From the IMG/VR virus record IMGVR_UViG_3300046616_000314, positions 310,001 through 374,000 of that record: DNA of 64,000 bases; one strand, given 5' to 3'. Each line of letters begins with the position of its first letter. Position 1 is the stretch's first letter. Made by a program: the position numbers and the translations under genes. The notes beneath the pieces are model-generated. The model saw only the letters and a list, made by a program, of their open reading frames with translations, was not told the DNA's origin and searched no databases. Below, piece by piece: positions 47,087 through 64,000 of the stretch.

Positions 47087-47287
47087 ATGAAGACCTTGAC
47101 CGCAAACGTCCCCGCTGATCTTGTCGATAAGATCGCCCGTGTTGAAGGTCTGGTTCGGGCTGCGGATGAATCGCGGCTGGTGTTCCAGCGGCGTTGCCTG
47201 ATGCTCTATGATATTTCGATGGGGCGCACCACCTATATCGCCACGCGCAAGCCTACACCCGTAGGGGAAGTGGTGCTAGATGCATAA
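47087..47287 (+). CDS. hypothetical protein
   Basis: Operon ORF. Confidence 0.5.
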   Translation: MKTLTANVPADLVDKIARVEGLVRAADESRLVFQRRCLMLYDISMGRTTYIATRKPTPVGEVVLDA

Positions 47288-48129: not shown

Positions 48130-48521
48130 TCATGCTGTATAAGACTCGTTGGGGTACCCATATCGATCTGTCGAAGATCGTGGCGATCACTGCCGAAACG
48201 ACCTACAAGTCGGTCTCTGTCACGGCACAACTACTCAACGAACCGATGAAGTTCCATCTGCAACATGCAGCGGACAATCAATACGGCGAAGACTGCGACA
48301 AGCGTGCCCAAGCTCTTGCCGCCGAAGGCAAGGACAAAAATGAAGCCTACGCCAACTACGCCGTTGGATGCGATGCGCTTCGCATCGAATGGGTCAACGA
48401 CCTGATGCAAGCCTGGACCGACTACAAGGCTTCGCGCGCCGCTCGACTCGACGCTTTGCTGACCCGCCTGGACGGCTCGTCGGACAAGGACGCCGTTGCC
48501 CTCATCAACGCTCTGTCGTAA
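48126..48521 (+). CDS. hypothetical protein
   Basis: Operon ORF, GC-rich codons. Confidence 0.6.
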   Translation: MIMLYKTRWGTHIDLSKIVAITAETTYKSVSVTAQLLNEPMKFHLQHAADNQYGEDCDKRAQALAAEGKDKNEAYANYAVGCDALRIEWVNDLMQAWTDYKASRAARLDALLTRLDGSSDKDAVALINALS

Positions 48522-48531
48522 GGTTCAAATC

Positions 48532-48714
48532 ATGATCGGCATCGTTGACACGCTCGCTACCCTGAAGAAGTTCAGTGACAAGCTTGTTGCTGAACGTATC
48601 GCCGAAGCTCGCGCCCAAATGCCCGAGTGGATGGCGGCTTCGTTCTCTGACCAAGATGTCGAGAACTGGATCACCGAACAACGCCTGCGCGCGGCTGTCG
48701 TCGCCACGGCGTAA
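48532..48714 (+). CDS. hypothetical protein
   Basis: AAGG RBS. Confidence 0.5.
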   Translation: MIGIVDTLATLKKFSDKLVAERIAEARAQMPEWMAASFSDQDVENWITEQRLRAAVVATA

Positions 48715-48974
48715 TGTCTACTGTGGAAATCATAACGACCGATGCGGGTCCGAATGATTGCTTGGTTTACACGACCAAGGTTCATATCGATACCACCAGG
48801 GACAAAGTGTATGTCCCTGGCGCGAATCAGTTGATTCCAGAAATATATGACTTCCTAAATGCGCGTGGCTGTCGTAGTTGGTCGCATCAAAGTAACGGTA
48901 CTTTTGAAGTACGTTTCGTCTTCTACAATATGCAAGAAGATGATCTAGTCATGTTCAAACTAAAATTCATTTGA
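48714..48974 (+). CDS. FKLKW-family small protein
   Basis: EIYDFLNARG ... QEDDLVMFKLKFI. Confidence 0.75.
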   Translation: MSTVEIITTDAGPNDCLVYTTKVHIDTTRDKVYVPGANQLIPEIYDFLNARGCRSWSHQSNGTFEVRFVFYNMQEDDLVMFKLKFI

Positions 48975-50334: not shown

Positions 50335-51075
50335 ATGCAACCCCTGTTCAACGTCAACGGTCTAATGTTCTGGAATGCGAAGCAGATCAAGCTTCGTAAT
50401 ACATTTAAAGAATATTTCGCTGACGGAATGCAAGCCGCACTGATCGCAGCTAACCCGGCTTGGCGTTTCGAGGAAATCGAGGCGCCGTTGCTGACCCCGC
50501 GTGATCTTCTGAACGTGAACTACACCGAAGAAGACATCTGGGTTCAAGGTGGCGAGGAAGCCCGTGAATTGGCTCTACGCCCCGAAACGACCCCTGGCAG
50601 CTACGTCTATGCCCAAAGCCTGTTAAACGGTCACACGGGCTTTAAACCGCCTCTGGTGGTGTGGCAGGCGGGTAAGTCGTTCCGGCGGGAGCAAGATCAA
50701 GTCACCAAGAACATGCGTCTCAAGGAATTCTATCAACAAGAATTCCAATGCATCTTCACGGCTGACACCCTGAACGATTATCACTCGTACATCCTTGAGC
50801 CCGTGCGCAAGATGATTGGCGACATGATCGGTCTGCCGACTCGTCTGGTGGAATCGGATCGTCTGCCGTCTTACAGTAAGATCACCATGGATGTCGAAGT
50901 TGATAACGGCGACAAGTGGATGGAAGTGTGCAGCATTTCTCTTCGCACGGACTTCCCTGACAAGGCTCGCTTTGCGGGCAAGGGTAGCGTGCAAATTGAA
51001 AAAGATTTGCTGGTACTTGAAGTCGCGATTGGTCTGGATCGCTGCGTTTACAATTGGGAGCAAGCTCACAAATGA
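50335..51075 (+). CDS. class II aminoacyl-tRNA synthetase catalytic core (GlyRS-like), no anticodon domain
   Basis: LRPETT.G, QAGKSFRRE, MRLKEFYQQEFQ (motif 2), EVCSIS.R.DF, EVAIGLDR (motif 3). Confidence 0.85.
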   Translation: MQPLFNVNGLMFWNAKQIKLRNTFKEYFADGMQAALIAANPAWRFEEIEAPLLTPRDLLNVNYTEEDIWVQGGEEARELALRPETTPGSYVYAQSLLNGHTGFKPPLVVWQAGKSFRREQDQVTKNMRLKEFYQQEFQCIFTADTLNDYHSYILEPVRKMIGDMIGLPTRLVESDRLPSYSKITMDVEVDNGDKWMEVCSISLRTDFPDKARFAGKGSVQIEKDLLVLEVAIGLDRCVYNWEQAHK

Positions 51076-51757: not shown

Positions 51758-52167
51758 ATAAATTTCAGCGAAAAGAATACTGCGCTATCGTGGTCAAAGA
51801 AACTGACCCGATAGTGCATTAACACGTCTCCGTTTTGGGAATGTTCCCGAATCAAACGGATCGACCATTTTCCCGTAATATTTTCATTCGCAACGATTTC
51901 GTCAGCGATCTTGACGAAAGTATCCGCGAGTTTGAGCGACGAGTTTTCGATCTTGACTTGAACAACATTGCGGCATTCGCCATGCTGAAAATTAGCAAAC
52001 CGTTCACTTCTTAGATTCTTATCATCCCAGGTGATGGATGGATGTTCAAGTCTAAAATAGCTGATAGAGGTTGAATCCGTATGTGGGATTACAAACGCTA
52101 GACCTACGCCGTCACGTCGAAGTGATCCAGATGCAATACTCTTGAAAGTTTCAGAAGCTATACTCAT
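51754..52167 (-). CDS. FKLKW-family protein
   Basis: GKW ... VSFFDHDSAVFFSLKFI. Confidence 0.65.
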   Translation of the reverse strand: MSIASETFKSIASGSLRRDGVGLAFVIPHTDSTSISYFRLEHPSITWDDKNLRSERFANFQHGECRNVVQVKIENSSLKLADTFVKIADEIVANENITGKWSIRLIREHSQNGDVLMHYRVSFFDHDSAVFFSLKFI

Positions 52168-52249
52168 ACTCTAATTTAACACATAATTACTCTTGACGAA
52201 TATTAAAAGCGTGGTACTTTACATTATTCTTTGATGTTTAGGACCCCAC

Positions 52250-52765
52250 ATGGCTAAGATCACCATCAAGACCCGAAGCAAGTACGATTCCATTAAGGAA
52301 GTGCTTCGGGATGGTGTGTTGGTTGCCGAATTCGCGTGGTCGCGTCAAAAGGTCCGTTGCATCGGTCGCCCTGATGAAATCCAATGCAAGGGCACGCTCT
52401 ACGACATCAAGACGGCTACGCATTCGAGCCTGAATGGCTTTGCTTGGTTTAGCGATGTCGTCAAGCATATCAACTCCATCTACGACAACCCTGACAAAGT
52501 GAAGTTCACGTTCGTTGGAAATGATTATAGCCGTCGCGAAGGTCGCCGCGACTATAGCCCGGTTTGGAAAGCTATCGGTCTGCATGGCTGGGGTAAGCTT
52601 GAAGGCGAAGTGGGTGAATGGTGCATCCAAAATTTTGGATACGCCCCGGAAACCCGTCCAGATGCGGCAAATACAAATAGGCTTCAGCGCGGCGCCGCCT
52701 TCAACTATATCTTCATCTTCCGTTGCGATGACGATTTTGTCGCGTTTAAGATGCGGTGGCTCTGA
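52250..52765 (+). CDS. FKLKW-family domain fused to unrelated N-terminal region
   Basis: EWCIQNFGY.P ... RCDDDFVAFKMRWL; AGGA RBS; TTGACG promoter at 52193. Confidence 0.8.
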   Translation: MAKITIKTRSKYDSIKEVLRDGVLVAEFAWSRQKVRCIGRPDEIQCKGTLYDIKTATHSSLNGFAWFSDVVKHINSIYDNPDKVKFTFVGNDYSRREGRRDYSPVWKAIGLHGWGKLEGEVGEWCIQNFGYAPETRPDAANTNRLQRGAAFNYIFIFRCDDDFVAFKMRWL

Positions 52766-53016
52766 TGGCGACGATCACGGCTCCCATATCTCGCTGTCTT
52801 GACGCGGTATATAAAAGCGTCGGTTGGAACGCCGTATTACCAGATACGGTGGTTGGTCTATGGTGCGTTCAACATTTGGGTTATCTTCCGAGTGTTCAAT
52901 ACAATTCGGGTTTCCCTTCCGAAAAGAATTGGCAATGCCACGCTGAAATGTTTGTTGAGTTTCGCAGCGAAGATGATGCCGTTGTCTTCAAAATGAAGTG
53001 GAGCGGGCGAGGATGA
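52765..53016 (+). CDS. FKLKW-family small protein
   Basis: WCVQHLGYLP ... RSEDDAVVFKMKWS. Confidence 0.8.
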   Translation: MATITAPISRCLDAVYKSVGWNAVLPDTVVGLWCVQHLGYLPSVQYNSGFPSEKNWQCHAEMFVEFRSEDDAVVFKMKWSGRG

Positions 53017-53240
53017 CCATGCTCTACATTCCCTATGACGACACGCACCCGGTGTACAATTCGATCCATTCGGTGATCGGAGGTTTCGCCATGAGATCGA
53101 CTGGACCTGTCGCCGAGTGGTGCATGAAAAACATCGGCTATCGTCCCTGGATTTATGCCAGGGGCGGACGCGATTACGGTTTCGAGATCGAGTTTCGTAA
53201 TGACACGGCGGCTGCACTCTTCAAGGTGAAGTGGCTATGA
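53013..53240 (+). CDS. FKLKW-family small protein
   Basis: WCMKNIGYRP ... AALFKVKWL. Confidence 0.8.
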   Translation: MTMLYIPYDDTHPVYNSIHSVIGGFAMRSTGPVAEWCMKNIGYRPWIYARGGRDYGFEIEFRNDTAAALFKVKWL

Positions 53241-53464
53241 AAATGTTTATTTCCTATGCCGATGCTAAGCGTCATGATTTCTATAATCAAATGGCGGCTA
53301 GGGGTGGCTTGCATTTCATTTTTCTATCGCCGTTGTGGATATGGTGCAATGAAGTTCTAGATTACCAACCATTCATCAGTCTTCGGGTTGGTATTGATTC
53401 TGGTTTGGATGTAGAATTCCAGACGGACGAAGATGCGCTATTGTTCAGGATGAAATGGCTATGA
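53237..53464 (+). CDS. FKLKW-family small protein
   Basis: WCNEVLDYQP ... TDEDALLFRMKWL. Confidence 0.8.
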   Translation: MKMFISYADAKRHDFYNQMAARGGLHFIFLSPLWIWCNEVLDYQPFISLRVGIDSGLDVEFQTDEDALLFRMKWL

Positions 53465-53661
53465 TAACACTCACCGTTTCTCGTGAAAAATATGTCAAAG
53501 TCGAAGGCTGGTACGTCAAGCCATATAAGGGTGATTACTTTTATGTTTGGTGTATTGAAAATCTAGGGTATTATCCAAAGACTTCGGCGTTCCTTGATTC
53601 AGTATCCGTTAGTTTCAAAACCGAGGAAGATGCAGGGGTGTTCACAATAAAATGGCTATGA
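53461..53661 (+). CDS. FKLKW-family small protein
   Basis: GWY ... WCIENLGYYP ... EEDAGVFTIKWL. Confidence 0.8.
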   Translation: MITLTVSREKYVKVEGWYVKPYKGDYFYVWCIENLGYYPKTSAFLDSVSVSFKTEEDAGVFTIKWL

Positions 53662-53867
53662 TGGTAGTAACGAAAGTTTCGATGACCGAAGCGCAGTATA
53701 CGAAGTTGCTCGCACTTGACGAGAACTGCCGGAATGCGTGCGTCGATTGGTTTCACGATTCGTTGGGCTATCGTCCTTACACACATAGCGAATGGGGTAG
53801 CCACATTTTCGAAATGACGTTCCTGTCTGAAGAAGATGCGGCATTGTTCAAGATAAAGTTTCTCTGA
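53658..53867 (+). CDS. FKLKW-family small protein
   Basis: WFHDSLGYRP ... EEDAALFKIKFL. Confidence 0.8.
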   Translation: MMVVTKVSMTEAQYTKLLALDENCRNACVDWFHDSLGYRPYTHSEWGSHIFEMTFLSEEDAALFKIKFL

Positions 53868-54463
53868 TGTTGACCTATTATCGTGATCCCATGACGTACA
53901 ACGTCATCTGGTGCCATGAAATCCCCTCGTGCGTGCTTGGGGAAACGCGGGATGTTATCGATATTCAAGTGTTCTTCAATGGACGGTTGGTTCATACCAC
54001 TCGTACTCAAGTCAAAAGCTTGAGACGCGCGCAGGCTCAAAAATTCTTTGAAGTTCGCGTGGCTCCGCTTATGTCGGACATCGGTACGCCGTTGACGAAG
54101 CGTATCAGCGATATCGAAGGCTATAACGACCGCGATTGGATCAACCGGGCACGGACCTTCCGCTATTTCGTCCATGTCGTTGCCTGGAACGAAACGGTCA
54201 TCAAGGAAGAATTCAAGGTCTGGAAATACGGTGTGTTCCTGCCGATCCACGTGCGCGACACGGAAATCCGTTCGAAGGAAATGGCGGTGATGAACGAGTA
54301 CGTCGCAGCCCAGTTCCAAAAAGATGCGGCTGTCGGCTTCACGATCACACAATTTGGTCACACCGAAAATAAAACCGTGGTATACCCTTTTGGTTTCATG
54401 AGCGAGGACGATGCCATGCTCATGATGCTGAAATTCAATGGTTTTAAGATGATTAAGTTATGA
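53867..54463 (+). CDS. FKLKW-family domain with N-terminal extension
   Basis: FMSEDDAMLMMLKF. Confidence 0.7.
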   Translation: MLTYYRDPMTYNVIWCHEIPSCVLGETRDVIDIQVFFNGRLVHTTRTQVKSLRRAQAQKFFEVRVAPLMSDIGTPLTKRISDIEGYNDRDWINRARTFRYFVHVVAWNETVIKEEFKVWKYGVFLPIHVRDTEIRSKEMAVMNEYVAAQFQKDAAVGFTITQFGHTENKTVVYPFGFMSEDDAMLMMLKFNGFKMIKL

Positions 54464-54780
54464 CAGATGGTGAGACAGATTTCCCAGTGAAGGCGACCGC
54501 TGATCAGTATTTTCGGATCGGCGGCTGGTATACCAAAAGTGCCATGGCGCCCGAATTGTTGATGGAACATCCAAATATGGATCAACCATTTCTTGTGTGG
54601 TGTCGGGAGGTCTTGGGTTATTATCCGCACACAGTGGACGTGTGGGAACAACAGTACGATATCTGGGAAAAGACACACGCCAATAACAATATCGATGAGG
54701 TTCCGCGTCTTGAAATCGGTTATATCGCGTACATGCGGACGGCTGAAGACGCAGTAGAATTCAAGCTGAAGTGGTTGTGA
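54460..54780 (+). CDS. FKLKW-family small protein
   Basis: GWY ... WCREVLGYYP ... AEDAVEFKLKWL. Confidence 0.8.
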   Translation: MTDGETDFPVKATADQYFRIGGWYTKSAMAPELLMEHPNMDQPFLVWCREVLGYYPHTVDVWEQQYDIWEKTHANNNIDEVPRLEIGYIAYMRTAEDAVEFKLKWL

Positions 54781-55055
54781 TGGAACTTCTCGACTACACC
54801 ACTAAAAATAAACTGACCGCGAGCGAAGACACCTACATGGCTATTGACGGCTGGTTCGTCAATTCCATCTTGGGTGATTCCGATACGTTGGAAGACGAGA
54901 TTTACAACGAAAACAAATTCGTCATCTGGTGCAGAGACCATTTGGGATACTACCCGTATTCGGTGACACGCGGCGAAGACGACAATGAATGTTATGTTGC
55001 GGTCTATTTCAAGAAAAGAGATCACGCCGCTTTGTTCAGACTACGGTGGCTCTGA
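54780..55055 (+). CDS. FKLKW-family small protein
   Basis: GWF ... WCRDHLGYYP ... HAALFRLRWL. Confidence 0.8.
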   Translation: MELLDYTTKNKLTASEDTYMAIDGWFVNSILGDSDTLEDEIYNENKFVIWCRDHLGYYPYSVTRGEDDNECYVAVYFKKRDHAALFRLRWL

Positions 55056-55339
55056 TGGAAATTTTGGACAAGGCAACGCGCCACAAATTGATTGCGCCAT
55101 ATGACAAGTACATGGCAACCGATGGTTGGTTTGCTAAGACAATCATGGTCCCAAGTATGGAAGGTGTCGAACGATACGACGACGCTCTAGGGATTCCTTT
55201 CATCGGGTGGTGTGAACAAGAACTGGGTTACTATCCGTACACAAAACTAATTTCCGCACGCGCGACCAATTTTCAACACATGGTGGTCTATTTTAAAAAA
55301 GCCGAACACGCTGCCATATTCAAATTAAAATGGTGCTAG
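55055..55339 (+). CDS. FKLKW-family small protein
   Basis: GWF ... WCEQELGYYP ... HAAIFKLKWC. Confidence 0.8.
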   Translation: MEILDKATRHKLIAPYDKYMATDGWFAKTIMVPSMEGVERYDDALGIPFIGWCEQELGYYPYTKLISARATNFQHMVVYFKKAEHAAIFKLKWC

Positions 55340-55621
55340 ATGGATATCATGCTCCATCAAACGCCGCATAGTGTTGACGTATCAACATCACAGTACGTTC
55401 AAACGTCTGGTTGGTATGTGACCACGTGTTTCAAGCATTGTGGCTATGACGTGTTCCATAATCCTATATATGCAGAACTTAATTCGTATGAATTTGTCAA
55501 ATGGTGCAAAGAAAAACTTGGCTACTATCCTCTCTCCGAAGATTCAAAGACGGAAGAGGTCATAACCACGTATTTCAAAACTGCCGCCGACTTACTTCAT
55601 TTTCGGTTGAAATGGCTATGA
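55340..55621 (+). CDS. FKLKW-family small protein
   Basis: GWY ... WCKEKLGYYP ... DLLHFRLKWL. Confidence 0.8.
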   Translation: MDIMLHQTPHSVDVSTSQYVQTSGWYVTTCFKHCGYDVFHNPIYAELNSYEFVKWCKEKLGYYPLSEDSKTEEVITTYFKTAADLLHFRLKWL

Positions 55622-55908
55622 CATTTCCACAAGATCGCCACGTCGATTTGTACGATCCTGCAATCTATACGCATTCAATGTTCTTGACGAACCGCGAGTA
55701 TGAGAGTGTGGAGGGATGGTTCCGCGATCCCGAAGACGCTAGCTATGAGTTTTATGAATGGTGCGTCAGCACCTTGGGGTATTATCCCATCGTCACGCAT
55801 GATTATCTGTCACCCGCGAGAAGGCTACGGGCTTCGGGGGTTAAGAGCACGTGCGGAAATTTTAAAAGTGAAGAAGATGCCATTCTGTTTAGGCTGAAAT
55901 GGCTATGA
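55618..55908 (+). CDS. FKLKW-family small protein
   Basis: GWF ... WCVSTLGYYP ... EEDAILFRLKWL. Confidence 0.8.
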   Translation: MTFPQDRHVDLYDPAIYTHSMFLTNREYESVEGWFRDPEDASYEFYEWCVSTLGYYPIVTHDYLSPARRLRASGVKSTCGNFKSEEDAILFRLKWL

Positions 55909-56183
55909 AAAAAACCAACAGCATGTCTTCCACGGTATTAGGCAACGATGTCGTGTATTTTGAGACACCGGGTTGGTACACCGAATGCGACCTTGCGTCG
56001 TATTCAGAAGAAAATAATATGAAACGCTATTACCACGTGATCGACACCAAGTATGAATACGTGCGTTGGTGTCTCGACCACCTTGGCTACTATCCAACTA
56101 CTCGTCTGAGCGATACCAACGAATTCATCATCTATTTGGATAGTGATGAAGACGCTACTCTATTCAAGTTGAAATGGTTATGA
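55905..56183 (+). CDS. FKLKW-family small protein
   Basis: GWY ... WCLDHLGYYP ... DEDATLFKLKWL. Confidence 0.8.
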   Translation: MKKTNSMSSTVLGNDVVYFETPGWYTECDLASYSEENNMKRYYHVIDTKYEYVRWCLDHLGYYPTTRLSDTNEFIIYLDSDEDATLFKLKWL

Positions 56184-56449
56184 AATATATTCAGCTACGC
56201 AAACCTACCAAGCATTGTCTTACGGCAAAATACCATCAGTACATTTTGACTGATGGATGGTTCACGTACGAAATTGCCATAGATGTCGGGCGCGAGCACG
56301 CTGAGCTTCATCCCTTTGTACAATGGTGCTTTGTTAATCTAGGGTACTATCCGTATTCTGAAGACTCCCGCGCGCATGTCGAAGATTTGATAAACATCTA
56401 TTTTCGATCCCAAGCCGACGCCGCTATGTTCAAGATGAAGTGGCTCTAG
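56180..56449 (+). CDS. FKLKW-family small protein
   Basis: GWF ... WCFVNLGYYP ... ADAAMFKMKWL. Confidence 0.8.
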   Translation: MKYIQLRKPTKHCLTAKYHQYILTDGWFTYEIAIDVGREHAELHPFVQWCFVNLGYYPYSEDSRAHVEDLINIYFRSQADAAMFKMKWL

Positions 56450-56450
56450 A

Positions 56451-56672
56451 ATGGGCTACATCATGACCATCCCGCGCCTAGAATACGAAGACGTTCCCGG
56501 CTGGTACGTCAATCCTAATTTGCTTGTGGGCGAATATCGGGAATGGTGTGATCTTCATCTTGGTTATTATCCGTTCACCGAACATAGTGATATTGGTGAC
56601 GTGGATGGAAAAACGTACGTCATGTTTGAGTCTGAAGAAGATTCACTTTTGTTCAAGTTGAAATGGTTATGA
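56451..56672 (+). CDS. FKLKW-family small protein
   Basis: GWY ... WCDLHLGYYP ... EEDSLLFKLKWL. Confidence 0.8.
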   Translation: MGYIMTIPRLEYEDVPGWYVNPNLLVGEYREWCDLHLGYYPFTEHSDIGDVDGKTYVMFESEEDSLLFKLKWL

Positions 56673-56905
56673 AGACTTACCCAGTATCGATATGGAAGTA
56701 TTACGATACTGACGGTTGGTTGATAACCGAAACCCGTGATGAGATATTGCCGGATATTGTTCTGCATTCAGAATACCATGAATGGTGCATGAAACATCTT
56801 GGCTATTACCCAATGACGTTATATACTGATTCGTCAGACGATTATGTTGACGTGGAATTTGAAACGGACGACCACGCGGCATTGTTTATATTGAAGTGGG
56901 GATAA
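56669..56905 (+). CDS. FKLKW-family small protein
   Basis: GWL ... WCMKHLGYYP ... DHAALFILKWG. Confidence 0.8.
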   Translation: MKTYPVSIWKYYDTDGWLITETRDEILPDIVLHSEYHEWCMKHLGYYPMTLYTDSSDDYVDVEFETDDHAALFILKWG

Positions 56906-57177
56906 TGCCGCCTATCGACGTGACATACATTCACCGAGACCTTCCGCATCTTATGGTGTGGAAGAAGGCGGATGATATCACCCGTGGCGGCGGAATAAGC
57001 ACGGAATTTGTCATGTCCGATTATTTCCGCCAATGGTGCATGGAAAACGTCGGCTATCTTCCCGAAGTGTGGATGGATAACCTTCGACTACGTAATTCGA
57101 TGGATGAGCATTTCTGGGTGAAGTTCATCTTCGATGATCCAGAGCACGCTATGTTGTTCAGGTTCAAATTCCAATGA
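56905..57177 (+). CDS. FKLKW-family small protein
   Basis: WCMENVGYLP ... EHAMLFRFKFQ. Confidence 0.8.
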   Translation: MPPIDVTYIHRDLPHLMVWKKADDITRGGGISTEFVMSDYFRQWCMENVGYLPEVWMDNLRLRNSMDEHFWVKFIFDDPEHAMLFRFKFQ

Positions 57178-57428
57178 CCCGCAACGAAACGATCTACTTC
57201 AACCCAGAGCAAACGCCGTTTCGGTATAGCCGTAAGCGGGCTCTTGTCATTGGGCTAGCCAGCCACAATGCATCGCGGTTTGGGCACCTTACAGATGAAG
57301 CCAATGCCATTACGAAATGGATGGATACCAATGGCATCATGTGGTGGTGGCGTGGGATGCTGGGGAATTACACCACGATTGGAATTTATGAAAAAGACTT
57401 TCCTTATTTCAAATTGAAATGGCTATGA
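57174..57428 (+). CDS. FKLKW-family small protein
   Basis: KWMDTNGI ... EKDFPYFKLKWL. Confidence 0.75.
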   Translation: MTRNETIYFNPEQTPFRYSRKRALVIGLASHNASRFGHLTDEANAITKWMDTNGIMWWWRGMLGNYTTIGIYEKDFPYFKLKWL

Positions 57429-57658
57429 CCGAACTAGTGATCGAATATGACACCTTCATGGATGTCGATGGCTGGTTCATCGACCCACGGTATCGGCGTA
57501 ACGATCCGTTCACGTCATGGTGCATGGAAAATCTTGGCTATTATCCCAAGGCAGAAATGCGCTCTACGGCACCGCCGACCGAGAGTTATTCTACCGGAGT
57601 GGTTGGACATTTCCTAAGCGACGATCATGCCGCCATGTTCAAGTTGAAATGGCTATGA
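57425..57658 (+). CDS. FKLKW-family small protein
   Basis: GWF ... WCMENLGYYP ... DHAAMFKLKWL. Confidence 0.8.
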   Translation: MTELVIEYDTFMDVDGWFIDPRYRRNDPFTSWCMENLGYYPKAEMRSTAPPTESYSTGVVGHFLSDDHAAMFKLKWL

Positions 57659-57879
57659 TTACTGTCCCGGTTGAATATCACGTGTATTATGAGATTGAAG
57701 GCTGGTACGTCAATCAACATGAGCCGGATACTGAGGACGACGCCCATTTTAGCAAATGGTGTATGAACACTCTTGGTTATTATCCATGGATTCACTACTC
57801 ACGAAGCGGCTTCGGTGAGCTTACCGCAAATTTCGAGACTGCCGAAGACGCAGCAGTATTCAGGTTGAAATGGCTATGA
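57655..57879 (+). CDS. FKLKW-family small protein
   Basis: GWY ... WCMNTLGYYP ... EDAAVFRLKWL. Confidence 0.8.
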   Translation: MITVPVEYHVYYEIEGWYVNQHEPDTEDDAHFSKWCMNTLGYYPWIHYSRSGFGELTANFETAEDAAVFRLKWL

Positions 57880-58106
57880 CCAGTATTCTCGTTCGGTATG
57901 GGACCTATGCACGAGTCGATGGCTGGTACATGGATTGGGAATTTTCAAAGCCCGAAGAGGCTTTTGTACTCTGGTGCGATAAGCATCTAGGTTATTATCC
58001 CAAAACTACATCTGTTCGCAACACATTGAATGGCAGTACGGAATTTGTTAGAGTAGAATTAGAAAACGATGACCATGCAATGTTGTTCAAGTTGAAGTGG
58101 CTATGA
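57876..58106 (+). CDS. FKLKW-family small protein
   Basis: GWY ... WCDKHLGYYP ... DHAMLFKLKWL. Confidence 0.8.
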   Translation: MTSILVRYGTYARVDGWYMDWEFSKPEEAFVLWCDKHLGYYPKTTSVRNTLNGSTEFVRVELENDDHAMLFKLKWL

Positions 58107-58474
58107 GAATTCGTCAGCTTTCCTTCCCGGTTGTGAACAGCAAAGAGGTTGTCACCTTCTATTTTGCTGCGATCCCCACGCGCCTAATCTTCGGCGACGT
58201 GAACGCCCAGGATTGGTTGAGACAGAACTGTGGGTTTTGTAATACTGAACTGATTTTCAATCCCGTTGAGCGTGCCATTCGTAAAGACTTCTACGAAAGC
58301 AATGTCATGTGGGGTTTGATTATAGACGCAAACGATACAGAAACATCGGGCTATGGGCGTATGTTCTATAAATTGTGTGAGCCTGATATGTCCGAATATC
58401 TCACGCGCAGTTATTGCATTTGGTTTCGGCGCGAAGAAGATGCGGCAATGTTCAAGATGAAATATCATGGATAG
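58103..58474 (+). CDS. FKLKW-family protein
   Basis: DWLRQNCG ... WFRREEDAAMFKMKY. Confidence 0.8.
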   Translation: MRIRQLSFPVVNSKEVVTFYFAAIPTRLIFGDVNAQDWLRQNCGFCNTELIFNPVERAIRKDFYESNVMWGLIIDANDTETSGYGRMFYKLCEPDMSEYLTRSYCIWFRREEDAAMFKMKYHG

Positions 58475-58994
58475 AATTACGATCATGGGTCCGACCGAGA
58501 CCCACGAGCTTTCCGGGTATTCCCTGAATCACGCGATTGCCTATGTCTCCAATTTCATATCGCTTCGCGAACACGTTATCAAATGGTTGAACACCTATCA
58601 GATCAACGTGACCGTTCAAGTTATCGCTTCGCAGCAATACAACGCCAAGAAAGAGCGGCTTGATGCACGTAACCAAGGCTATGACAAAATCGGACGTAAG
58701 ATCATCTTGCGTTTCGAGCGTGATTCCGAAGCGTTGCTATTCTGGTATCACCATGATCTGAAACACACGGTTCATTTTTGCGACAAGTTGGGTCAGCACA
58801 TTCATTATGGTGATCGCCGGTATTATTTCACCGCACATATTGAAGACTGGATTGCGGAAAATGATATCCTTGTCCCGCTGATTGATCGAACAGCGAAGAC
58901 ATTTCAAGAAGGCGTGACCGAAGTCGGATATCACTATGATATCTGGTTTGCTAAGGACGAACATGCTACAATGTTTAAATTGAAATGGGGCTGA
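58467..58994 (+). CDS. FKLKW-family protein, two tandem domains
   Basis: KWLNTY..LRFERDSEALLF; DWIAEND..IWFAKDEHATMFKLKWG. Confidence 0.8.
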   Translation: MDRITIMGPTETHELSGYSLNHAIAYVSNFISLREHVIKWLNTYQINVTVQVIASQQYNAKKERLDARNQGYDKIGRKIILRFERDSEALLFWYHHDLKHTVHFCDKLGQHIHYGDRRYYFTAHIEDWIAENDILVPLIDRTAKTFQEGVTEVGYHYDIWFAKDEHATMFKLKWG

Positions 58995-58996
58995 AG

Positions 58997-59311
58997 ATGT
59001 TCGTTGATTACGAAAAAATCGGCACGTACTTGATGATTATGGCTGGCATTGGGATGCTGTTCCTTGTGCCTCTCATCTTCATCGCAGGCGACCAATCCTT
59101 TGACGATGCCGTTGCAAAGCAAATGGTCGTTGATCGCGGCTACACCAGTGTTCGAATCGACCAACCGGCGCCTATGCAATGCGCTGGACGCTATCAGACC
59201 AACTCACGCTATTTTGTGGCGAAGCGTACAGATGGACGATGGGCACGGGGTGTATTATGCGCCGGAACGTTCAATCAGAACGTCGATGTCAAAGAATACA
59301 AAGTCTACTAG
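58997..59311 (+). CDS. membrane-anchored protein
   Basis: N-terminal TM, two Cys; sits at the convergence point of the two arrays. Confidence 0.65.
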   Translation: MFVDYEKIGTYLMIMAGIGMLFLVPLIFIAGDQSFDDAVAKQMVVDRGYTSVRIDQPAPMQCAGRYQTNSRYFVAKRTDGRWARGVLCAGTFNQNVDVKEYKVY

Positions 59312-59523
59312 CCGTACTTCAGCTTCAGCATAGCCGCTGCATCTTCGTTCTTATGATACATCTGTATTCTGAGCATTCGGGGATCGCCGAAGCTATAGCC
59401 CCAACGTGTTCCAAAATTTGACGCCATGAACTGATATAGTTCATCGGTCAACATGAAATCGTCTGCATTGCCTGCCATTGGCAAATACACGGTGTGGAAA
59501 CACTCGTCAGTAGCGGTTTTCAT
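59308..59523 (-). CDS. FKLKW-family small protein
   Basis: ELYQFMASNFG ... NEDAAAMLKLKYG. Confidence 0.75.
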   Translation of the reverse strand: MKTATDECFHTVYLPMAGNADDFMLTDELYQFMASNFGTRWGYSFGDPRMLRIQMYHKNEDAAAMLKLKYG

Positions 59524-59876
59524 TGCGTAACCCATAGTAAGCGCATAAGCGTCATATCTTCTTCACTAGTGAAGAAAAACCGATGTAGTTTCGGATGAAT
59601 CGGGTCTTCAGCCATGATGAAATACGTCCAAGGCTGAAACGTAATCTTTTTCGGGACAATATTCAACATATTATCGAGAAAGCTTTTGTTGCTGGTATGG
59701 TATTCGATATCAAACGTGAATAGTTCTTTGTGTTCAAGCATGTCATTAATATACGACATGATCCAATCTATGTTTTCATTCGTGGCGGTAATGTAATGGA
59801 AGCTCAAGCGTCGCAAACCTTGTTCGGCGGCGCGAGCATATACTTCATCAAGGTCTTTGGAGGTTATTTTAGGCAT
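59520..59876 (-). CDS. FKLKW-family protein
   Basis: FFFTSEEDMTLMRLLW. Confidence 0.7.
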   Translation of the reverse strand: MPKITSKDLDEVYARAAEQGLRRLSFHYITATNENIDWIMSYINDMLEHKELFTFDIEYHTSNKSFLDNMLNIVPKKITFQPWTYFIMAEDPIHPKLHRFFFTSEEDMTLMRLLWVTQ

Positions 59877-60109
59877 CAGCCGAACTTCATCTTTACAAGC
59901 GCAATGTCATCATCCGTGCCCGCAAAAGTGCTGATGGTGATGATTTTGGTCAAAGGATTCATCGAATAGCTCCAAGCTAATTCGAACGTTTGGCTCATAT
60001 ACATATACAGTTCGTAAGACAAGAACATGGTTCTGCTATGCCGAGTGTCGGTTGTGCGCTCACTGAACGCCAGTTCGATCTTACGGGTATTGATAATGTG
60101 ATACTTCAT
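59876..60109 (-). CDS. FKLKW-family small protein
   Basis: ELYMYMSQTF ... TDDDIALVKMKFG. Confidence 0.7.
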   Translation of the reverse strand: MKYHIINTRKIELAFSERTTDTRHSRTMFLSYELYMYMSQTFELAWSYSMNPLTKIITISTFAGTDDDIALVKMKFG

Positions 60110-60348
60110 AGGAATTTCAGCTTGAATAGCATCGCGATCTCTTCATCATTGAAGTTGATGATGAAACGTTTGCGGTTCGACAATAGCAATCCCGTCACGA
60201 ATTGAAACCCTGGTGGGGCAATGCCGTGGTCGTTGAACCATTCCAGCACGTGCGGACGGTATTCCCAACGCGCAGACGGTCCAACGATGAAAATCTTATC
60301 ATCGGTGTCTGACGCCCATTTGCGGGCTGATTCGTGAATGACCTTCAT
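60106..60348 (-). CDS. FKLKW-family small protein
   Basis: EWFNDHGI.PP ... DEEIAMLFKLKFL. Confidence 0.8.
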   Translation of the reverse strand: MKVIHESARKWASDTDDKIFIVGPSARWEYRPHVLEWFNDHGIAPPGFQFVTGLLLSNRKRFIINFNDEEIAMLFKLKFL

Positions 60349-60560
60349 AGCCATTTCATCTTGAATGCAACGGCTTCTTCACTCGATAAGAATTCGAGGA
60401 CGATCATGTCTTTGGTGGCACTTTTAGTGATAGATGGAAGGCTGATGCCATTGGCATTGCACCATTGCTTCACTTCGCCCGAAAGTCTCGCCTGCCACGA
60501 ATTGTAGTAGACGATTTCTTTGGCGGCGGGCAAATGATAGGAAAAGGCGATTGTCTTCAT
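60345..60560 (-). CDS. FKLKW-family small protein
   Basis: QWCNANGI.LP ... SEEAVAFKMKWL. Confidence 0.8.
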   Translation of the reverse strand: MKTIAFSYHLPAAKEIVYYNSWQARLSGEVKQWCNANGISLPSITKSATKDMIVLEFLSSEEAVAFKMKWL

Positions 60561-60790
60561 AGGAATTTCAGCTTGAACATGGCTGCATCGTCCTCACTAG
60601 CGAACGTCAACACAAAGCCGTTTGCAGTCTTACCAGTATACCGAAGTTCTCGAAAACAAATCAATTTAATTCCGGCGGCGAGAAGTTGCGTTCTCCCCTC
60701 CCTGGTAAGACGGCGATTGTAGGACCCATGTTCGACGCTCAAAAAAGTGAATTCAATGAACTGCGAATATGTAACAGTAAGGTCGCTCAT
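60557..60790 (-). CDS. FKLKW-family small protein
   Basis: LTFASEDDAAMFKLKFL. Confidence 0.8.
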   Translation of the reverse strand: MSDLTVTYSQFIEFTFLSVEHGSYNRRLTREGRTQLLAAGIKLICFRELRYTGKTANGFVLTFASEDDAAMFKLKFL

Positions 60791-61035
60791 GACCATTTCA
60801 TCTTGAACATCATGGCATCCTCATCCGTATAAAATGAGAATACGTACATATAGGACAACACCACTTCGCCGGGAAAGTGTGCAGCGTTGAATGCTGTCGT
60901 GTTGATACGCGGTTCTCGCGCCAAATTCTTTCCACACCAGATGCGAATGTCTTTGCGCAAAACATCGTGATCGTGCGATTGGATATTAATGTAATCGCGA
61001 ATGTTGTACGGGTGGATATAGACACAATTACTCAT
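60787..61035 (-). CDS. FKLKW-family small protein
   Basis: IWCGKNL ... TDEDAMMFKMKWS. Confidence 0.8.
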   Translation of the reverse strand: MSNCVYIHPYNIRDYINIQSHDHDVLRKDIRIWCGKNLAREPRINTTAFNAAHFPGEVVLSYMYVFSFYTDEDAMMFKMKWS

Positions 61036-61718
61036 GACGCCCATTTCATCTTGTAGATAAGGCGGGCTTCGTCCGTGGGGAGGAAGAGGAAGTTTTCTTT
61101 GCTATTCCAATTCCAAATGAATTCGCATTTGTGTTGGATGATGAGATCGTAAAGGGCGCCGTCGAACGCTTTGTCAGGCGTATTATATTCCGACTGTTCC
61201 TTGATCCAACTCGACGTACACCGGGTTGGGTCTAGTAGCGGCGTGGGGACGTATTCGAAGCCGATTCTATTCCACGTGTATTGCCCTGGACGTTCACCGT
61301 AGCCGAGACGTTGAACAAGATCGTAGGTCAGGTGAACATACGTTTCACCAAATGCTTCATCGTATTTTGCCAAGAAGGCGCACTGATCCGGTGTGACCGG
61401 ATTGGCGAATTCAAGATGGAAAATGGTGACGTGTTTTGGATTCTTGCGGTTCAGGGGACGATTGATGTTCGTCCGACGCAGCAACGGCAATTGCCCGAAG
61501 TGTTCAAGAAACCACGCTTGATAATCGGGTGCGATCTGCGACCAATACCAATTGGTGCTCCCGATGTCGATTCGTTCGTCGTCATGCCCGGCATGTTCAC
61601 CGAACCAGAAAGCGGCGAGATTATTCGAGATAAGAATCTCTACCGTAGGCTTAACTTCAGGCAAGCGCGTATGATTGCTGCCTACCTTGATGACCGTGAT
61701 ATTGGTAAGTTTTCCCAT
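61032..61718 (-). CDS. FKLKW-family protein, probably two domains (leaderless)
   Basis: AWFLEHFG..P; PTDEARLIYKMKW; TAGACA-N17-TATTGT 6 nt before ATG. Confidence 0.75.
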   Translation of the reverse strand: MGKLTNITVIKVGSNHTRLPEVKPTVEILISNNLAAFWFGEHAGHDDERIDIGSTNWYWSQIAPDYQAWFLEHFGQLPLLRRTNINRPLNRKNPKHVTIFHLEFANPVTPDQCAFLAKYDEAFGETYVHLTYDLVQRLGYGERPGQYTWNRIGFEYVPTPLLDPTRCTSSWIKEQSEYNTPDKAFDGALYDLIIQHKCEFIWNWNSKENFLFLPTDEARLIYKMKWAS

Positions 61719-61750
61719 GCGTAGACAATAAACGAAAATACGTTCGTTGT

Positions 61751-62080
61751 CTAGTGCAAGTATACGTGCAAGAACTTCATCTTGAACATCGCCGCCATGT
61801 CTTCATCGGGAAAAGGAATGACGTATGTAATAGGGTGCTTTACTTTAGTACCATTGATTCGAGCCAACTGGTCTGCAAAGGCTGTCTCGCCCGTATCGGG
61901 TTCTTCGATGCCCAGTGATGCCAGAACCTCTTCGGACTGTTCTGGGGGCACTTCAGCAATCTCTACACCCCGTTCGTCGCACCATTCTTGCACGGTGCGA
62001 TAAAGCTCGCGACGTTTCGCCCAACCGTTGAAGTGGGTCAGCTTGAATACTTGTTCTTCTGTGAGATAGAGATAAAACAT
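61751..62080 (-). CDS. FKLKW-family small protein
   Basis: EWCDERGV ... PDEDMAAMFKMKFL. Confidence 0.8.
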   Translation of the reverse strand: MFYLYLTEEQVFKLTHFNGWAKRRELYRTVQEWCDERGVEIAEVPPEQSEEVLASLGIEEPDTGETAFADQLARINGTKVKHPITYVIPFPDEDMAAMFKMKFLHVYLH

Positions 62081-62087
62081 GAGATAT

Positions 62088-62348
62088 TTATAGCCATTTC
62101 AATTTGAACAATGTCGCGTCATCTTCAGATTGGAATTCAATACTGTAGCTATTGATAGTTTTGTCTTCGGGGTCTTCATCAGACCAATTAAGGTGCGTGG
62201 TGATCTTGATGTCATATCCCAGGTTGTCGAGACACCATTCACAAACTTCTTTGCCATGGATAGCAGGACGATAGTCGCGACCAATATAGCTCCATTCACA
62301 GAGTAAGGTGTAGCCCTTCTCTTTGGTCAAATGCAATCGCGAAGTCAT
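62088..62348 (-). CDS. FKLKW-family small protein
   Basis: EWCLDNLGY ... SEDDATLFKLKWL. Confidence 0.8.
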   Translation of the reverse strand: MTSRLHLTKEKGYTLLCEWSYIGRDYRPAIHGKEVCEWCLDNLGYDIKITTHLNWSDEDPEDKTINSYSIEFQSEDDATLFKLKWL

Positions 62349-62665
62349 AGCCATTTCATCTTGAACATCAGTAGATCGGCTGCGGTCTTGAATTTCAAAG
62401 AATAGTAATGGGTGGCGTCCGAATGTTTGGGAGCTTTGTGACGCAGAAATAGCGGAACAAGTTCTAGATTTTGATCACACCATTCTTCAATATTTGCGGC
62501 TAGTCTATAGCTATTGCACAAACGGTTGCCGACCATGCGAAAAACAAAATAGTCTCGCCAGTTCGCGCTTGGAACATCGATGGTAATTTTGTTTCGCACT
62601 GATATTGGCACCTTGATTACGTGCTTCAGGTCTGATGCGCGAAGGTTTCTGGGATACTCAGTCAT
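62345..62665 (-). CDS. FKLKW-family small protein
   Basis: EWCDQNL ... TAADLLMFKMKWL. Confidence 0.8.
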   Translation of the reverse strand: MTEYPRNLRASDLKHVIKVPISVRNKITIDVPSANWRDYFVFRMVGNRLCNSYRLAANIEEWCDQNLELVPLFLRHKAPKHSDATHYYSLKFKTAADLLMFKMKWL

Positions 62666-62931
62666 AGAAATTTCAACTTGAACTGGACCAATTGTTCGTC
62701 AGTGGAATCAGGCAAACAAATCAGCCATTCGTTACCAATCATTCCGCTATTACACGTGATGTACGGAAGGGGATCGAACCCGGCGATCTTACACCATTCG
62801 ATTTCATCTGGCTTGGTGATGTTGTACTCAAGTTCTTTCCCCTTCAGAACCGAGACACCATAGGGCGACCACGTTGCGAAACGAGTGAGCAACTGAGTAA
62901 TGTCGATGTCGATATAGCGATCTTGTTTCAT
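62662..62931 (-). CDS. FKLKW-family small protein
   Basis: EWCKIAGF ... TDEQLVQFKLKFL. Confidence 0.8.
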   Translation of the reverse strand: MKQDRYIDIDITQLLTRFATWSPYGVSVLKGKELEYNITKPDEIEWCKIAGFDPLPYITCNSGMIGNEWLICLPDSTDEQLVQFKLKFL

Positions 62932-63179
62932 AGCCACTTCAACTTGAACAGGGTCGCATCTTCTTCAGATCGAAATACCAGCTTGAGTTTTCCTACGTCT
63001 GGTTGATCAGCTTCTTGAATCCGGGGCGTAGCAATCTTGTTTTCAACACACCATTTTTTGATAGGAGGTACCCAACGGTATATGAAATATGGATTCCCCT
63101 CACTGGGATGATAATCAGGATTATGCTCTGAAAGGGTCAGAGGAATCAATGCGATATATTGACAAACGAGTGCAGTCAT
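62928..63179 (-). CDS. FKLKW-family small protein
   Basis: KWCVENKI.TP ... SEEDATLFKLKWL. Confidence 0.8.
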   Translation of the reverse strand: MTALVCQYIALIPLTLSEHNPDYHPSEGNPYFIYRWVPPIKKWCVENKIATPRIQEADQPDVGKLKLVFRSEEDATLFKLKWL

Positions 63180-63394
63180 AGCCACTTCATCTTGAACATC
63201 AACGCGGTTTCTTCGTCATCGAACACCAGTCGGAATTCTTCGTCGTCCCAGGACAGAGCGGGCATGGTAATCTTGTTGGTGGCGCACCATGACGCGACTT
63301 GCGGTCTCCAATTACACACATAGTTACCGTCTTGTGGGTAAGCGTCGATAACCAATTTAAATATCTGCATTTGTGGATAAAGATATTCAGTCAT
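63176..63394 (-). CDS. FKLKW-family small protein
   Basis: SWCATNKI.MP ... DEETALMFKMKWL. Confidence 0.8.
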   Translation of the reverse strand: MTEYLYPQMQIFKLVIDAYPQDGNYVCNWRPQVASWCATNKITMPALSWDDEEFRLVFDDEETALMFKMKWL

Positions 63395-63609
63395 AGCCAC
63401 TTCAGCTTGAATAACGTTGCGTCTTCATCGTTGCGATATCCTATCCGAAACTCTTGATCGTCTATTATGCTTTGGCGCAAGTATGGGATGATGATATCGT
63501 TGGCGATACACCACTTACTGACAGCCTCGTGCCAATACCACATGCCTGAAGGTCTATTACAGCGGCATAGGTCTTTCAGTTGCGTGTATGTGTAGTAGAT
63601 GAGGATCAT
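63391..63609 (-). CDS. FKLKW-family small protein
   Basis: KWCIANDI.IP ... DEDATLFKLKWL. Confidence 0.8.
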   Translation of the reverse strand: MILIYYTYTQLKDLCRCNRPSGMWYWHEAVSKWCIANDIIIPYLRQSIIDDQEFRIGYRNDEDATLFKLKWL

Positions 63610-63833
63610 CGCCATTTCAGTTTGAAGAGTGCCGCTTCTTCTTCGGTGTCGATAAACATATCATGAACCCAATCTGTAATATAGCCCACACGACTATAAA
63701 TTGGACAAGAATCTATATTATATACTATGCGATTATCGAAGCACCATTTCTCCATTTCGGGAAGCAACTCCCATTCATTCCAATCAAATTGGGTGACTTC
63801 GCGGTCGTATAGACTGATACGGGTACGGACCAT
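63606..63833 (-). CDS. FKLKW-family small protein
   Basis: KWCFDNRI ... TEEEAALFKLKWR. Confidence 0.8.
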   Translation of the reverse strand: MVRTRISLYDREVTQFDWNEWELLPEMEKWCFDNRIVYNIDSCPIYSRVGYITDWVHDMFIDTEEEAALFKLKWR

Positions 63834-63988
63834 CACACACCGGGTATGTGTCTAGAGTGATATTCCCGTTGATAATCGCTACACTGATCAAAATAGCCCG
63901 TCATGCAGATGGGACATTCGGGTTGATAATGTTCCTCTTCTTGCGAAGACCCTTGCCACCAATTCCAGATAGCCTTGAGAATTTTCAT
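63833..63988 (-). CDS. 51-aa non-family protein embedded in the array
   Basis: MKILKAIWNWW...ECPIC...; ATGA-coupled to an upstream ...FKWL* end and TGATG-coupled to the next gene. Confidence 0.55.
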   Translation of the reverse strand: MKILKAIWNWWQGSSQEEEHYQPECPICMTGYFDQCSDYQREYHSRHIPGV

Positions 63989-64000
63989 AGCCATTTGAAC

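What the first reader, a model, noticed from the sequence alone, without database searches (positions are those of the whole stretch)
53220..63990. Gene ends double as a recurrent DNA junction and restart signal: cassette-like architecture without an integrase
Seen: the 3' end of most array genes reads approximately GA(AG)GA(TC)GC-N5-TGTTCAAG(TAC)TGAA(AG)TGG(CT)TATGA. The Leu-stop codons supply the next gene's ATG (TGG CTA TGA gives ATGA; TGG CTC TGA TG gives TGATG). Nearly all junctions overlap by 1 or 4 nt and lack a clear Shine-Dalgarno sequence. An unrelated 51-aa gene (63833-63988) is coupled in with the same junction. Inference: crossover between any two of these 25-40 bp ends would delete, duplicate or insert whole genes precisely, keeping both reading frame and translational coupling. 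This would be an integron-like accordion driven by phage recombination. Caveat: synonymous variation (AAA/AAG, CTA/TTA/CTC) suggests much of the conservation is at protein level.
Basis: partly seen in the sequence, partly recalled or inferred. Interest (0 to 1): 0.75.

Follow-up and report, generated by a model that had tools for sequence, protein, structure and literature searches.

The report
Giant small-protein gene family, translationally coupled
The repeated "junction" is the coding sequence for the conserved tail of a small phage protein copied about 250 times in a 561-kb phage, with its last codon and stop tuned to overlap the next gene's start; it is not a dedicated recombination site, though one whole-gene gain or loss does map to it.

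Summary
In the window, 34 of 40 array gene ends overlap the next start by 4 nt (ATGA, 27) or 1 nt (7). Shine-Dalgarno-like motifs are absent.

The motif encodes the conserved C-terminal helix (…EEDAxLFKLKW-L-stop) of an undescribed small-protein family with no Pfam, PHROG or NCBIfam match and a weakly KH-like predicted fold. The 561-kb T4-related jumbo phage has about 250 copies, roughly 15% of its DNA. The window shows part of an 80-gene pair of convergent arrays.

Nucleotide conservation is almost entirely explained by the protein: mean pairwise identity of the ends is 56.4%, against about 55% after synonymous resampling. The strong exception is the last Leu codon (CTA/TTA 69% vs 19% expected) and the TGA stop, which create the overlapping ATG. 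That fits translational coupling.

There is no integrase, hairpin, promoter or terminator at the junctions, and no near-identical copies. Arrays grew by old local tandem duplication.

A near-identical freshwater relative carries extra family gene(s) between two genes adjacent here, and both breakpoints lie in the same 21-nt motif. So the motif is probably incidental microhomology for rare unequal crossover, not a cassette system.

The parts
52250..58994 (+). Plus-strand array of 23 tightly packed small genes (68-198 aa). All are family members ending in ...EEDAxLFKLKW-x-stop or a degenerate form of it.
   Evidence: ORFs and translations; gene-end table; HMM hits; junction classes
52142..52204 (+). 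Two sigma-70-like promoter matches just upstream of the first plus-strand array gene. This is a candidate array promoter, by inference only.
   Evidence: Promoter-like sites are not enriched over shuffles across the region, so this is weak.
57638..57658 (+). Example junction TTCAAGTTGAAATGGCTATGA (FKLKWL-stop, with the next gene's ATG inside CTATGA). At this junction the close freshwater relative has different neighbours on both sides.
   Evidence: read laying records 5 and 6 and loose ends; the relative's flanking sequences are absent from this genome
58985..59311 (+). Non-family 108-aa ORF with a hydrophobic N-terminal stretch. It is the last gene of the plus-strand array.
   Evidence: translation; no Pfam or PHROG hit
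59308..59311 (.). The point where the two convergent arrays meet. The two stop codons overlap in CTAG, leaving no intergenic space and no terminator.
   Evidence: Sequence; terminator scan
59308..63836 (-). Minus-strand array, window part: 16 family genes (71-228 aa). It belongs to a 59-gene run that continues to genome 386,480.
63833..63994 (-). Unrelated Cys-containing 53-aa (51-aa) gene embedded in the array and coupled at both ends.
   Evidence: no family hit
63985..64000 (-). 3' end (FKWL-stop) of the next family gene. The rest of the gene lies beyond the window.

Best explanation
The recurrent gene-end sequence is the codons of the conserved C-terminal beta-strand and helix (F-x-[ST]-E-E-D-A-x-L-F-K-L-K-W-L) of an undescribed family of small phage proteins of about 70-110 aa. 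The family has expanded to about 250 copies in this 561-kb T4-related jumbo phage.

The last sense codon and the stop are additionally selected (CTA or TTA, or another NNA codon, followed by TGA). This places the next gene's ATG over the stop as ATGA. Ribosomes that finish one gene can then restart on the next without a Shine-Dalgarno site, so dozens of genes can be translated from long polycistronic mRNAs.

The arrays arose by local tandem duplication followed by deep divergence. The short shared ends (a 21-nt core) are incidental microhomology at which rare unequal crossovers add or remove whole in-frame genes. They are not a dedicated recombination site.

Shown here: the family, its size, the codon bias, the overlaps, the missing SD, the clustering of paralogs with their neighbours, and one indel at the motif. 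Inferred: reinitiation itself, polycistronic transcription, the crossover mechanism, and what the proteins do. My best guess for function is a diversified set of small KH-like binding modules used in host takeover or nucleic-acid binding.
For: Family and scale:
- My HMM finds 250 ORFs at E<1e-3 (206 at E<1e-5), about 15% of the genome. The largest array has 80 genes.
- The genome search with alignment A1 gives at least 147 matches here, capped by the tool. Other jumbo phage records give 32, 13, 11, 6 and 4.
- Cultured Sinorhizobium phage Phosso has 15.

Protein-level conservation:
- The 45-nt ends are 56.4% identical pairwise, against 54.6-54.9% after synonymous resampling.
- AF2 places the motif in the last strand and helix of a confident fold (pLDDT 84.6 and 79.5).

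Start-stop selection:
- The terminal Leu is CTA in 56 of 94 cases and TTA in 9 of 94. Expected counts are 10.8 and 7.0 (p=1e-46).
- TGA is the stop in 109 of 152 family genes, against 27% of long ORFs.
- ATGA follows 116 of 250 family genes, against 47 of 377 other ORFs.
- In the window, 34 of 40 gene ends overlap the next start by 4 or 1 nt.
- Unit length mod 3 equals 2 in 60 of 78 cases.
- SD-like motifs occur at 4% of junction starts.
- Junction windows fold less stably than internal windows, -9.3 vs -11.2 kcal/mol, p=4e-5.
- Members in 50 unrelated IMG/VR loci behave the same way: 67 of 88 overlap, and the terminal Leu is TTA or CTA in 26 of 29.
- Coupling at ATGA/TGATG overlaps is experimentally established in bacteria (PMC6728339).

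Tandem duplication:
- The best paralog is the adjacent family gene in 53 of 250 cases and within 3 positions in 73 of 250. Random expectation is about 6.

Indel at the motif.
Against: - There is modest synonymous bias at three internal motif codons: Phe TTC, the first Lys AAG and the inner Leu TTG/CTG (p between 1e-6 and 1e-14 against the family's own usage). Protein constraint alone does not explain it. For Phe and Lys it points toward the codons preferred in long ORFs.
- Pairs sharing at least 20 exact nt number 46, against 7-17 under the null models.
- Neither reinitiation nor polycistronic transcription was measured.
- Protein function is unknown. The KH-like similarity is weak (best Z 5.4-6.4, below the tool's 8 guideline).
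Confidence: 0.75

Rival explanations
1. The 25-40 bp gene ends are a selected DNA junction at which phage recombination routinely deletes, duplicates or inserts whole genes, giving an integron-like accordion.
For: - One whole-gene difference from a 95-100% identical relative has both breakpoints inside the 21-nt motif. The inserted sequence is absent from this genome.
- Paralogs cluster with their neighbours.
- The phage encodes homologous-recombination proteins: a RecA/UvsX-like protein at genome 531,693-532,463 and an SbcC/gp46-like protein at window 41735-43801.
- There is a small excess of pairs sharing at least 20 exact nt.
Against: - No DNA conservation beyond codon choice outside the last codon and stop.
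- The typical shared exact run is 7 nt and the maximum is 26 nt.
- No hairpin at the ends.
- No tyrosine or serine recombinase in 561 kb.
- The closest paralogs are only 42-50% identical in protein, and no nucleotide similarity exists outside the motif. There are therefore no recent duplications or conversion tracts.
- Six of seven junctions covered in the relative are colinear.
- Selection for intact genes would place surviving indel ends at gene borders under any mechanism.
Confidence: 0.12
2. The conserved extreme C-terminus (…FKLKW-L-COOH) is a recognition tag read by a common partner, for example for packaging, export or proteolysis. It would be conserved for that reason rather than as a fold element.
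For: - The motif sits exactly at the C-terminus. In 152 of 212 members only one residue follows the aromatic (W/F/Y) position.
- It is by far the most conserved part across about 250 otherwise 20-40% identical paralogs.
Against: - Both AF2 models bury it as the terminal helix packed on the sheet, with pLDDT around 90.
- Some members carry C-terminal extensions of 2-13 residues.
- No partner is known.
Confidence: 0.08
3. The motif is a regulatory nucleic-acid element, such as a PeSL-like promoter/terminator cassette or an RNA processing site, embedded in the gene ends.
For: TTGAAA inside the motif resembles a -35 hexamer. This is a sequence observation only.
Against: - Promoter-like and terminator-like sites are not enriched: 24 vs 25±4 and 8 vs 10.7±3.7.
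- The ends fold no better than shuffles.
- There is no intergenic space.
- Synonymous sites are free.
Confidence: 0.03

Closest known systems
Translational coupling by termination-reinitiation at ATGA/TGATG overlaps (Huber et al. 2019, PMC6728339)
   Same: The overlap types are the same. Downstream starts lack or do not need an SD. The arrangement is operon-like and tightly packed.
   Different: Here the overlap is built into the conserved last codon of a protein family and repeated through arrays of up to 59 co-oriented genes. Coupling itself was not measured.
PeSL regulatory cassettes in T4-type phage hyperplastic regions (Arbiol et al. 2010, PMC2839356; Comeau et al. 2014, PMC4122927)
   Same: Both occur in T4-related phages. 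Both are repeated short sequences between small non-essential genes, proposed to mediate gain, loss and shuffling of whole genes by recombination.
   Different: PeSLs are intergenic. They consist of a sigma-70 promoter, a stem-loop terminator and an SD, and they were shown to form mini-circles. Here the repeat is coding, has no promoter, hairpin or SD, and is conserved only through the protein.
Integron gene cassettes
   Same: Arrays of small promoterless genes separated by a recurrent end sequence.
   Different: There is no IntI integrase, no attC hairpin and no attI/Pc. The genes here are paralogs of one family, not unrelated cassettes.
Lineage-specific expansions in jumbo phages and giant viruses, e.g. 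the ~35-copy zinc-ribbon expansion in Bacillus phage G, called unprecedented by Iyer et al. 2021 (PMC7824862)
   Same: A tandemly amplified and diverged small-domain family in a very large phage genome.
   Different: The scale is about 250 copies and about 15% of the genome, roughly seven-fold larger. The family has no Pfam, PHROG or NCBIfam model.
Type I KH domains (hnRNP K, Nova, FBP; atypical KHDC3/OOEP)
   Same: One model shows a beta-alpha-alpha-beta-beta-alpha order, and both models share a beta-alpha-beta-beta-alpha core. KH domains top the VIA-align lists for both models.
   Different: There is no conserved GxxG loop, no KH Pfam hit, and Z is only 5.4-6.4. This is a lead, not a membership.

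Membership tests
Integron / gene cassette array | Adjacent IntI-type tyrosine recombinase | tested here: not met
   PF00589 has no match in the whole 561-kb genome, with positive controls in 14 of 14 genomes. PF00239 has none either.
Integron / gene cassette array | attC site: an imperfect inverted repeat that folds as a hairpin at each cassette end | tested here: not met
   The 45-nt gene ends fold at -6.4 kcal/mol, against -6.1 for shuffles. Pairwise identity is explained by the protein.
PeSL cassettes of T4-type phages | Intergenic sigma-70 promoter plus stem-loop terminator plus SD between the genes | tested here: not met
   34 of 40 junctions overlap, so there is no intergenic DNA. Promoters and terminators are not enriched. 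SD-like motifs occur at 4% of starts.
Translationally coupled overlapping gene pairs (termination-reinitiation) | Co-directed genes with an ATGA or TGATG stop/start overlap | tested here: met
   27 ATGA and 7 one-nt overlaps among 40 ends in the window. ATGA follows 116 of 250 family genes genome-wide, against 47 of 377 other ORFs. Codon bias creates the ATG.
Translationally coupled overlapping gene pairs (termination-reinitiation) | Downstream translation depends on upstream translation | not testable with these tools
   Needs reporter fusions or ribosome profiling. No RNA run holding this DNA was found.
Genomic accordion (recent copy-number amplification, as in poxvirus K3L) | Near-identical tandem copies whose number varies | tested here: not met
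   The closest paralog pairs are 42-50% identical in protein. Self-blastn finds only 35-60-nt matches at the motif.
Tandem multigene family (duplication and divergence) | Homologous genes in head-to-tail arrays whose nearest relatives are their neighbours | tested here: met
   The best hit is the adjacent family gene in 53 of 250 cases and within 3 positions in 73 of 250, against about 6 expected. Alignment A1 shows a shared domain.
Type I KH domain | Beta-alpha-alpha-beta-beta-alpha fold | tested here: inconclusive
   Model 1 has this order. Model 2 shares only the beta-alpha-beta-beta-alpha core. KH domains rank top, but Z is 5.4-6.4, under the tool's guideline of 8. Foldseek finds nothing at E<0.02.
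Type I KH domain | Conserved GxxG loop between helices 1 and 2, and a match to KH profiles | tested here: not met
   Alignments A1, A3 and A4 show no conserved GxxG, and the region is variable with low pLDDT. There is no Pfam hit.

The most novel reading that the evidence does not exclude
The family's conserved end works as a self-propagating plug-and-play joint. Because every copy ends with the same codons and an ATGA restart, any unequal crossover between two ends yields an intact, correctly translated array. This would let the phage rapidly gain, lose and reshuffle members of a ~250-strong repertoire of small KH-like binders, possibly host-takeover or anti-defence factors, under arms-race selection. 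It would be a coding-sequence analogue of PeSL or integron cassettes that needs no dedicated recombinase.
Probability: 0.2. Interest if true: 0.8.

Novelty: new variant of a known kind. Interest (0 to 1): 0.55.

Why it matters
- One undescribed small-protein family takes up about 15% of a 561-kb phage genome. That is roughly seven times the largest lineage-specific expansion highlighted in a survey of 224 jumbo phages (PMC7824862). It marks a major unknown investment of huge phages.
- The family occurs in many uncultured phages and in a cultured Sinorhizobium phage, so it can be studied experimentally.
- The arrays are an extreme natural example of serial SD-less start-stop coupling, with up to 59 genes in one orientation.
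- The single motif-bounded indel gives a concrete, testable case of how coding microhomology could make a gene array evolvable.

Tried and rejected
- Megablast and tblastn against INPHARED phages with the array and one member found no match.
- Pfam, PHROGs and NCBIfam scans of window members and of 51 outside members found no family. The only hits were one sub-threshold PHROG and two sub-threshold Pfam hits.
- An HMM search of PDB sequences gave nothing below E=0.04.
- Foldseek against PDB, BFVD and AFDB clusters gave nothing at E<0.02.
- I searched for close relatives so that I could compare arrays. The search for related loci in viral contigs failed with a single protein, an alignment and a tighter alignment. 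It also failed in metagenome contigs.
- The search for homologous proteins returned only the query itself.
- Exact-protein look-ups returned only the source sample's two assemblies.
- A second metagenome scan was not run. The same peptide pattern had already failed.
- The long multi-repeat proteins P0012, P0021 and P0031 in the representative search are spurious summed weak hits, either HA-domain repeats or low complexity.
- I tested whether the ATG or GTG formed by Lys-Trp (AAA/AAG TGG) is the selected start. AAA use equals the family background and does not depend on Trp vs Phe/Tyr, so the ATGA start is the selected one.
- An assembly artefact is rejected. A 171.5-kb Logan contig and the 561-kb JGI contig agree with 0 differences at even depth of about 37.
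- Read laying returned only contigs, not raw reads, so rare joints or circles could not be sought.
Full report
**What the window is.** The window is bases 310,001-374,000 of a 561,116-bp IMG/VR virus record that CheckV rates 97% complete. The record comes from a rhizosphere metagenome. Its portal protein (window 30034-31812) matches T4 gp20 in Pfam. The portal is about 51% identical to those of Sinorhizobium phage Phosso (469 kb) and Agrobacterium phage Atu_ph07 (490 kb), and 45-47% identical to Rak2-like jumbo phages. This is therefore a T4-related jumbo phage, probably of a soil proteobacterium.

**Checking the observation.** The described motif and overlaps are present and far beyond chance.
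- The 36-nt consensus has 16 matches within 3 mismatches. The 21-nt core has 18 matches within 1 mismatch. Shuffles give none for either.
- Of 40 array gene ends in the window, 27 are ATGA overlaps and 7 are TGATG/TAATG overlaps.
- SD-like cores occur upstream of only 6 of 149 junction starts. The figure is 22% for crude starts of long ORFs and 6.8% at random positions.
- The small unrelated gene at 63833-63994 is coupled at both ends.

The stated coordinates need correcting. The array begins at 52250. It consists of two convergent arrays whose last stop codons overlap in CTAG at 59308-59311, with no terminator between them. The minus-strand array continues beyond the window to genome position 386,480.

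**What the motif is.** All these genes are paralogs of 20-40% identity that share a C-terminal F-x-[ST]-E-E-D-A-x-L-F-K-L-K-W-L and an internal W-C-x3-L-G-Y-x-P.
- An HMM of the last 60 residues finds 250 stop-to-stop ORFs at E<1e-3 in this genome, and 206 at E<1e-5. They sit in about 45 clusters and cover about 15% of the DNA. The largest array has 80 genes over 24 kb.
- With the same profile, five other jumbo phage records hold 4-32 copies, Phosso holds 15 (all annotated hypothetical), and Atu_ph07 holds none.
- A profile search of 1.84 billion cluster representatives returns only 330 proteins. About 40% of the top 150 belong to this genome.
- A degenerate DNA pattern finds the motif in 50 IMG/VR loci from contigs of 5-480 kb.
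- No Pfam, PHROG or NCBIfam model matches.
- AF2 models of two subfamilies (pLDDT 84.6 and 79.5) share a beta-alpha-beta-beta-alpha core in which the motif forms the last strand and the terminal helix.
- KH type I domains top both VIA-align lists, but at Z 5.4-6.4, and the family has no GxxG loop. This is only a lead.

**Is the DNA conserved beyond the protein?** I tested this in four ways.
1. Synonymous codon use at each conserved residue, compared with the family's own usage. The terminal Leu is CTA in 56 of 94 cases and TTA in 9, where 10.8 and 7.0 are expected (p=1e-46). TGA is the stop in 109 of 152 family genes, against 27% of long ORFs. The Lys before Trp shows no bias. Phe, the first Lys and the inner Leu show modest bias.
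2. Pairwise comparison of 147 canonical 45-nt ends. Mean identity is 56.4%, against 54.6-54.9% when synonymous codons are resampled. The mean longest shared exact run is 7.2 nt and the maximum is 26 nt. Only 46 of 10,731 pairs share 20 nt or more, against 7-17 under the null models. Those 46 pairs simply use the same codons for FKLKWL-stop and are not otherwise close paralogs.
3. Self-blastn of the array. It finds only 35-60-nt matches at gene ends and one 124-nt match at 72%.
4. Folding. The ends have no hairpin potential beyond shuffles. The 60 nt around the ATGA are less structured than windows inside the same genes (-9.3 vs -11.2 kcal/mol, p=4e-5).

The nucleotide motif is therefore a protein motif plus a start-stop overlap. 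Members in unrelated phages show the same feature: 67 of 88 overlap the next gene, and the terminal Leu is TTA or CTA in 26 of 29. The coupling is thus a trait of the family. Termination-reinitiation at such overlaps is experimentally established (PMC6728339). It was not measured here.

**How the arrays evolved.** The best paralog of a gene is the adjacent family gene in 53 of 250 cases and lies within three positions in 73 of 250. Random expectation is about 6. Growth was therefore by local tandem duplication. The closest pairs are only 42-50% identical, so the duplications are old. Nothing resembles an active accordion of near-identical copies.

The genome has no tyrosine or serine recombinase. 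It does encode a RecA/UvsX-like protein and an SbcC/gp46-like protein.

**Comparison with a close relative.** Three freshwater metagenome runs hold short, low-depth contigs 95-100% identical to parts of window 57.3-62 kb.
- Six junctions are colinear: 57428, 57879, 58106, 59310, 60560 and 60796.
- At junction 57638-57658, one contig matches the end of gene 57419-57658 up to the last base of the stop, then continues into a different family-like N-terminus.
- Another contig matches gene 57649-57879 from the first base of the 21-nt motif, but is preceded by a different family C-terminus. This contig carries the same three variants as the X3 contig that covers the start of gene 57649-57879.
- Neither foreign flank exists in this genome.

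The relative therefore has at least one extra family gene between two genes that are adjacent here, and both breakpoints fall in the same 21-nt direct repeat. That is what an unequal crossover between junctions would produce. It is a single event from short contigs. Selection for intact genes would also bias surviving indels toward gene borders.

**Verdict.** The claim of a conserved DNA junction or integron-like system is not. The claim that whole genes come and go at the motif has one supporting case. The closest published concept, PeSL cassettes in T4-type phages (PMC2839356, PMC4122927), differs because PeSLs are intergenic promoter-terminator elements.

The more striking result is the scale of the expansion. 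It is about seven-fold larger than the ~35-copy zinc-ribbon expansion in phage G, which a survey of 224 jumbo phages called unprecedented (PMC7824862). What these proteins do remains open.

Noticed in passing
window 59308-59311: The two convergent arrays end with overlapping stop codons (CTAG). There is no intergenic DNA and no terminator-like hairpin, so convergent transcripts would collide unless the arrays are expressed at different times.
   Followed up: partly
window 1500-48974 (e.g. 13704-14009, 24763-25026, 39249-39665, 45747-48974): Seventeen further family members are scattered singly or in small groups among structural and replication genes upstream of the main array.
   Followed up: partly
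genome-wide family gene ends: Three internal motif codons show unexplained synonymous bias relative to the family's own usage: Phe TTC 70%, first Lys AAG 60%, inner Leu TTG/CTG 77%. NTG followed by AAR also creates a TGA in the +1 frame.
   Followed up: partly
window 57367-61975: A 95-100% identical relative of this rhizosphere phage is present at low depth in freshwater metagenomes from two other studies.
   Followed up: partly
window 63833-63994 (-): The embedded 53-aa non-family protein contains C-P-I-C and a third Cys further on. It could be a small metal-binding peptide. It has no database match.
   Followed up: no
window 58985-59311 (+): A 108-aa ORF with a hydrophobic N-terminal segment closes the plus-strand array. 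It is not a family member and has no Pfam or PHROG hit.
   Followed up: no
window 50335-51075 (+): A 246-aa ORF matches the class II aminoacyl-tRNA synthetase core (tRNA-synt_2b, E=8e-10). It is much shorter than a full synthetase.
   Followed up: no
window 53867-54463, 58467-58994, 61032-61718: Some array members are two to three times longer (175-228 aa). They carry N-terminal extensions in front of the family core, and 53867-54463 has a degenerate C-terminal motif.
   Followed up: no
window 41735-43801 (-), 30034-31812 (-), 5424-5498 (+), 5858-7900 (-): SbcC/gp46-like SMC-type ATPase, T4-type portal, tRNA-Gly(TCC), and a 680-aa protein with a C-terminal He_PIG Ig-like domain.
   Followed up: partly
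PV764938.1 (Sinorhizobium phage Phosso) vs MF403008.1 (Atu_ph07): The two nearest cultured relatives by portal identity differ sharply. Phosso has 15 family matches and Atu_ph07 has none.
   Followed up: partly
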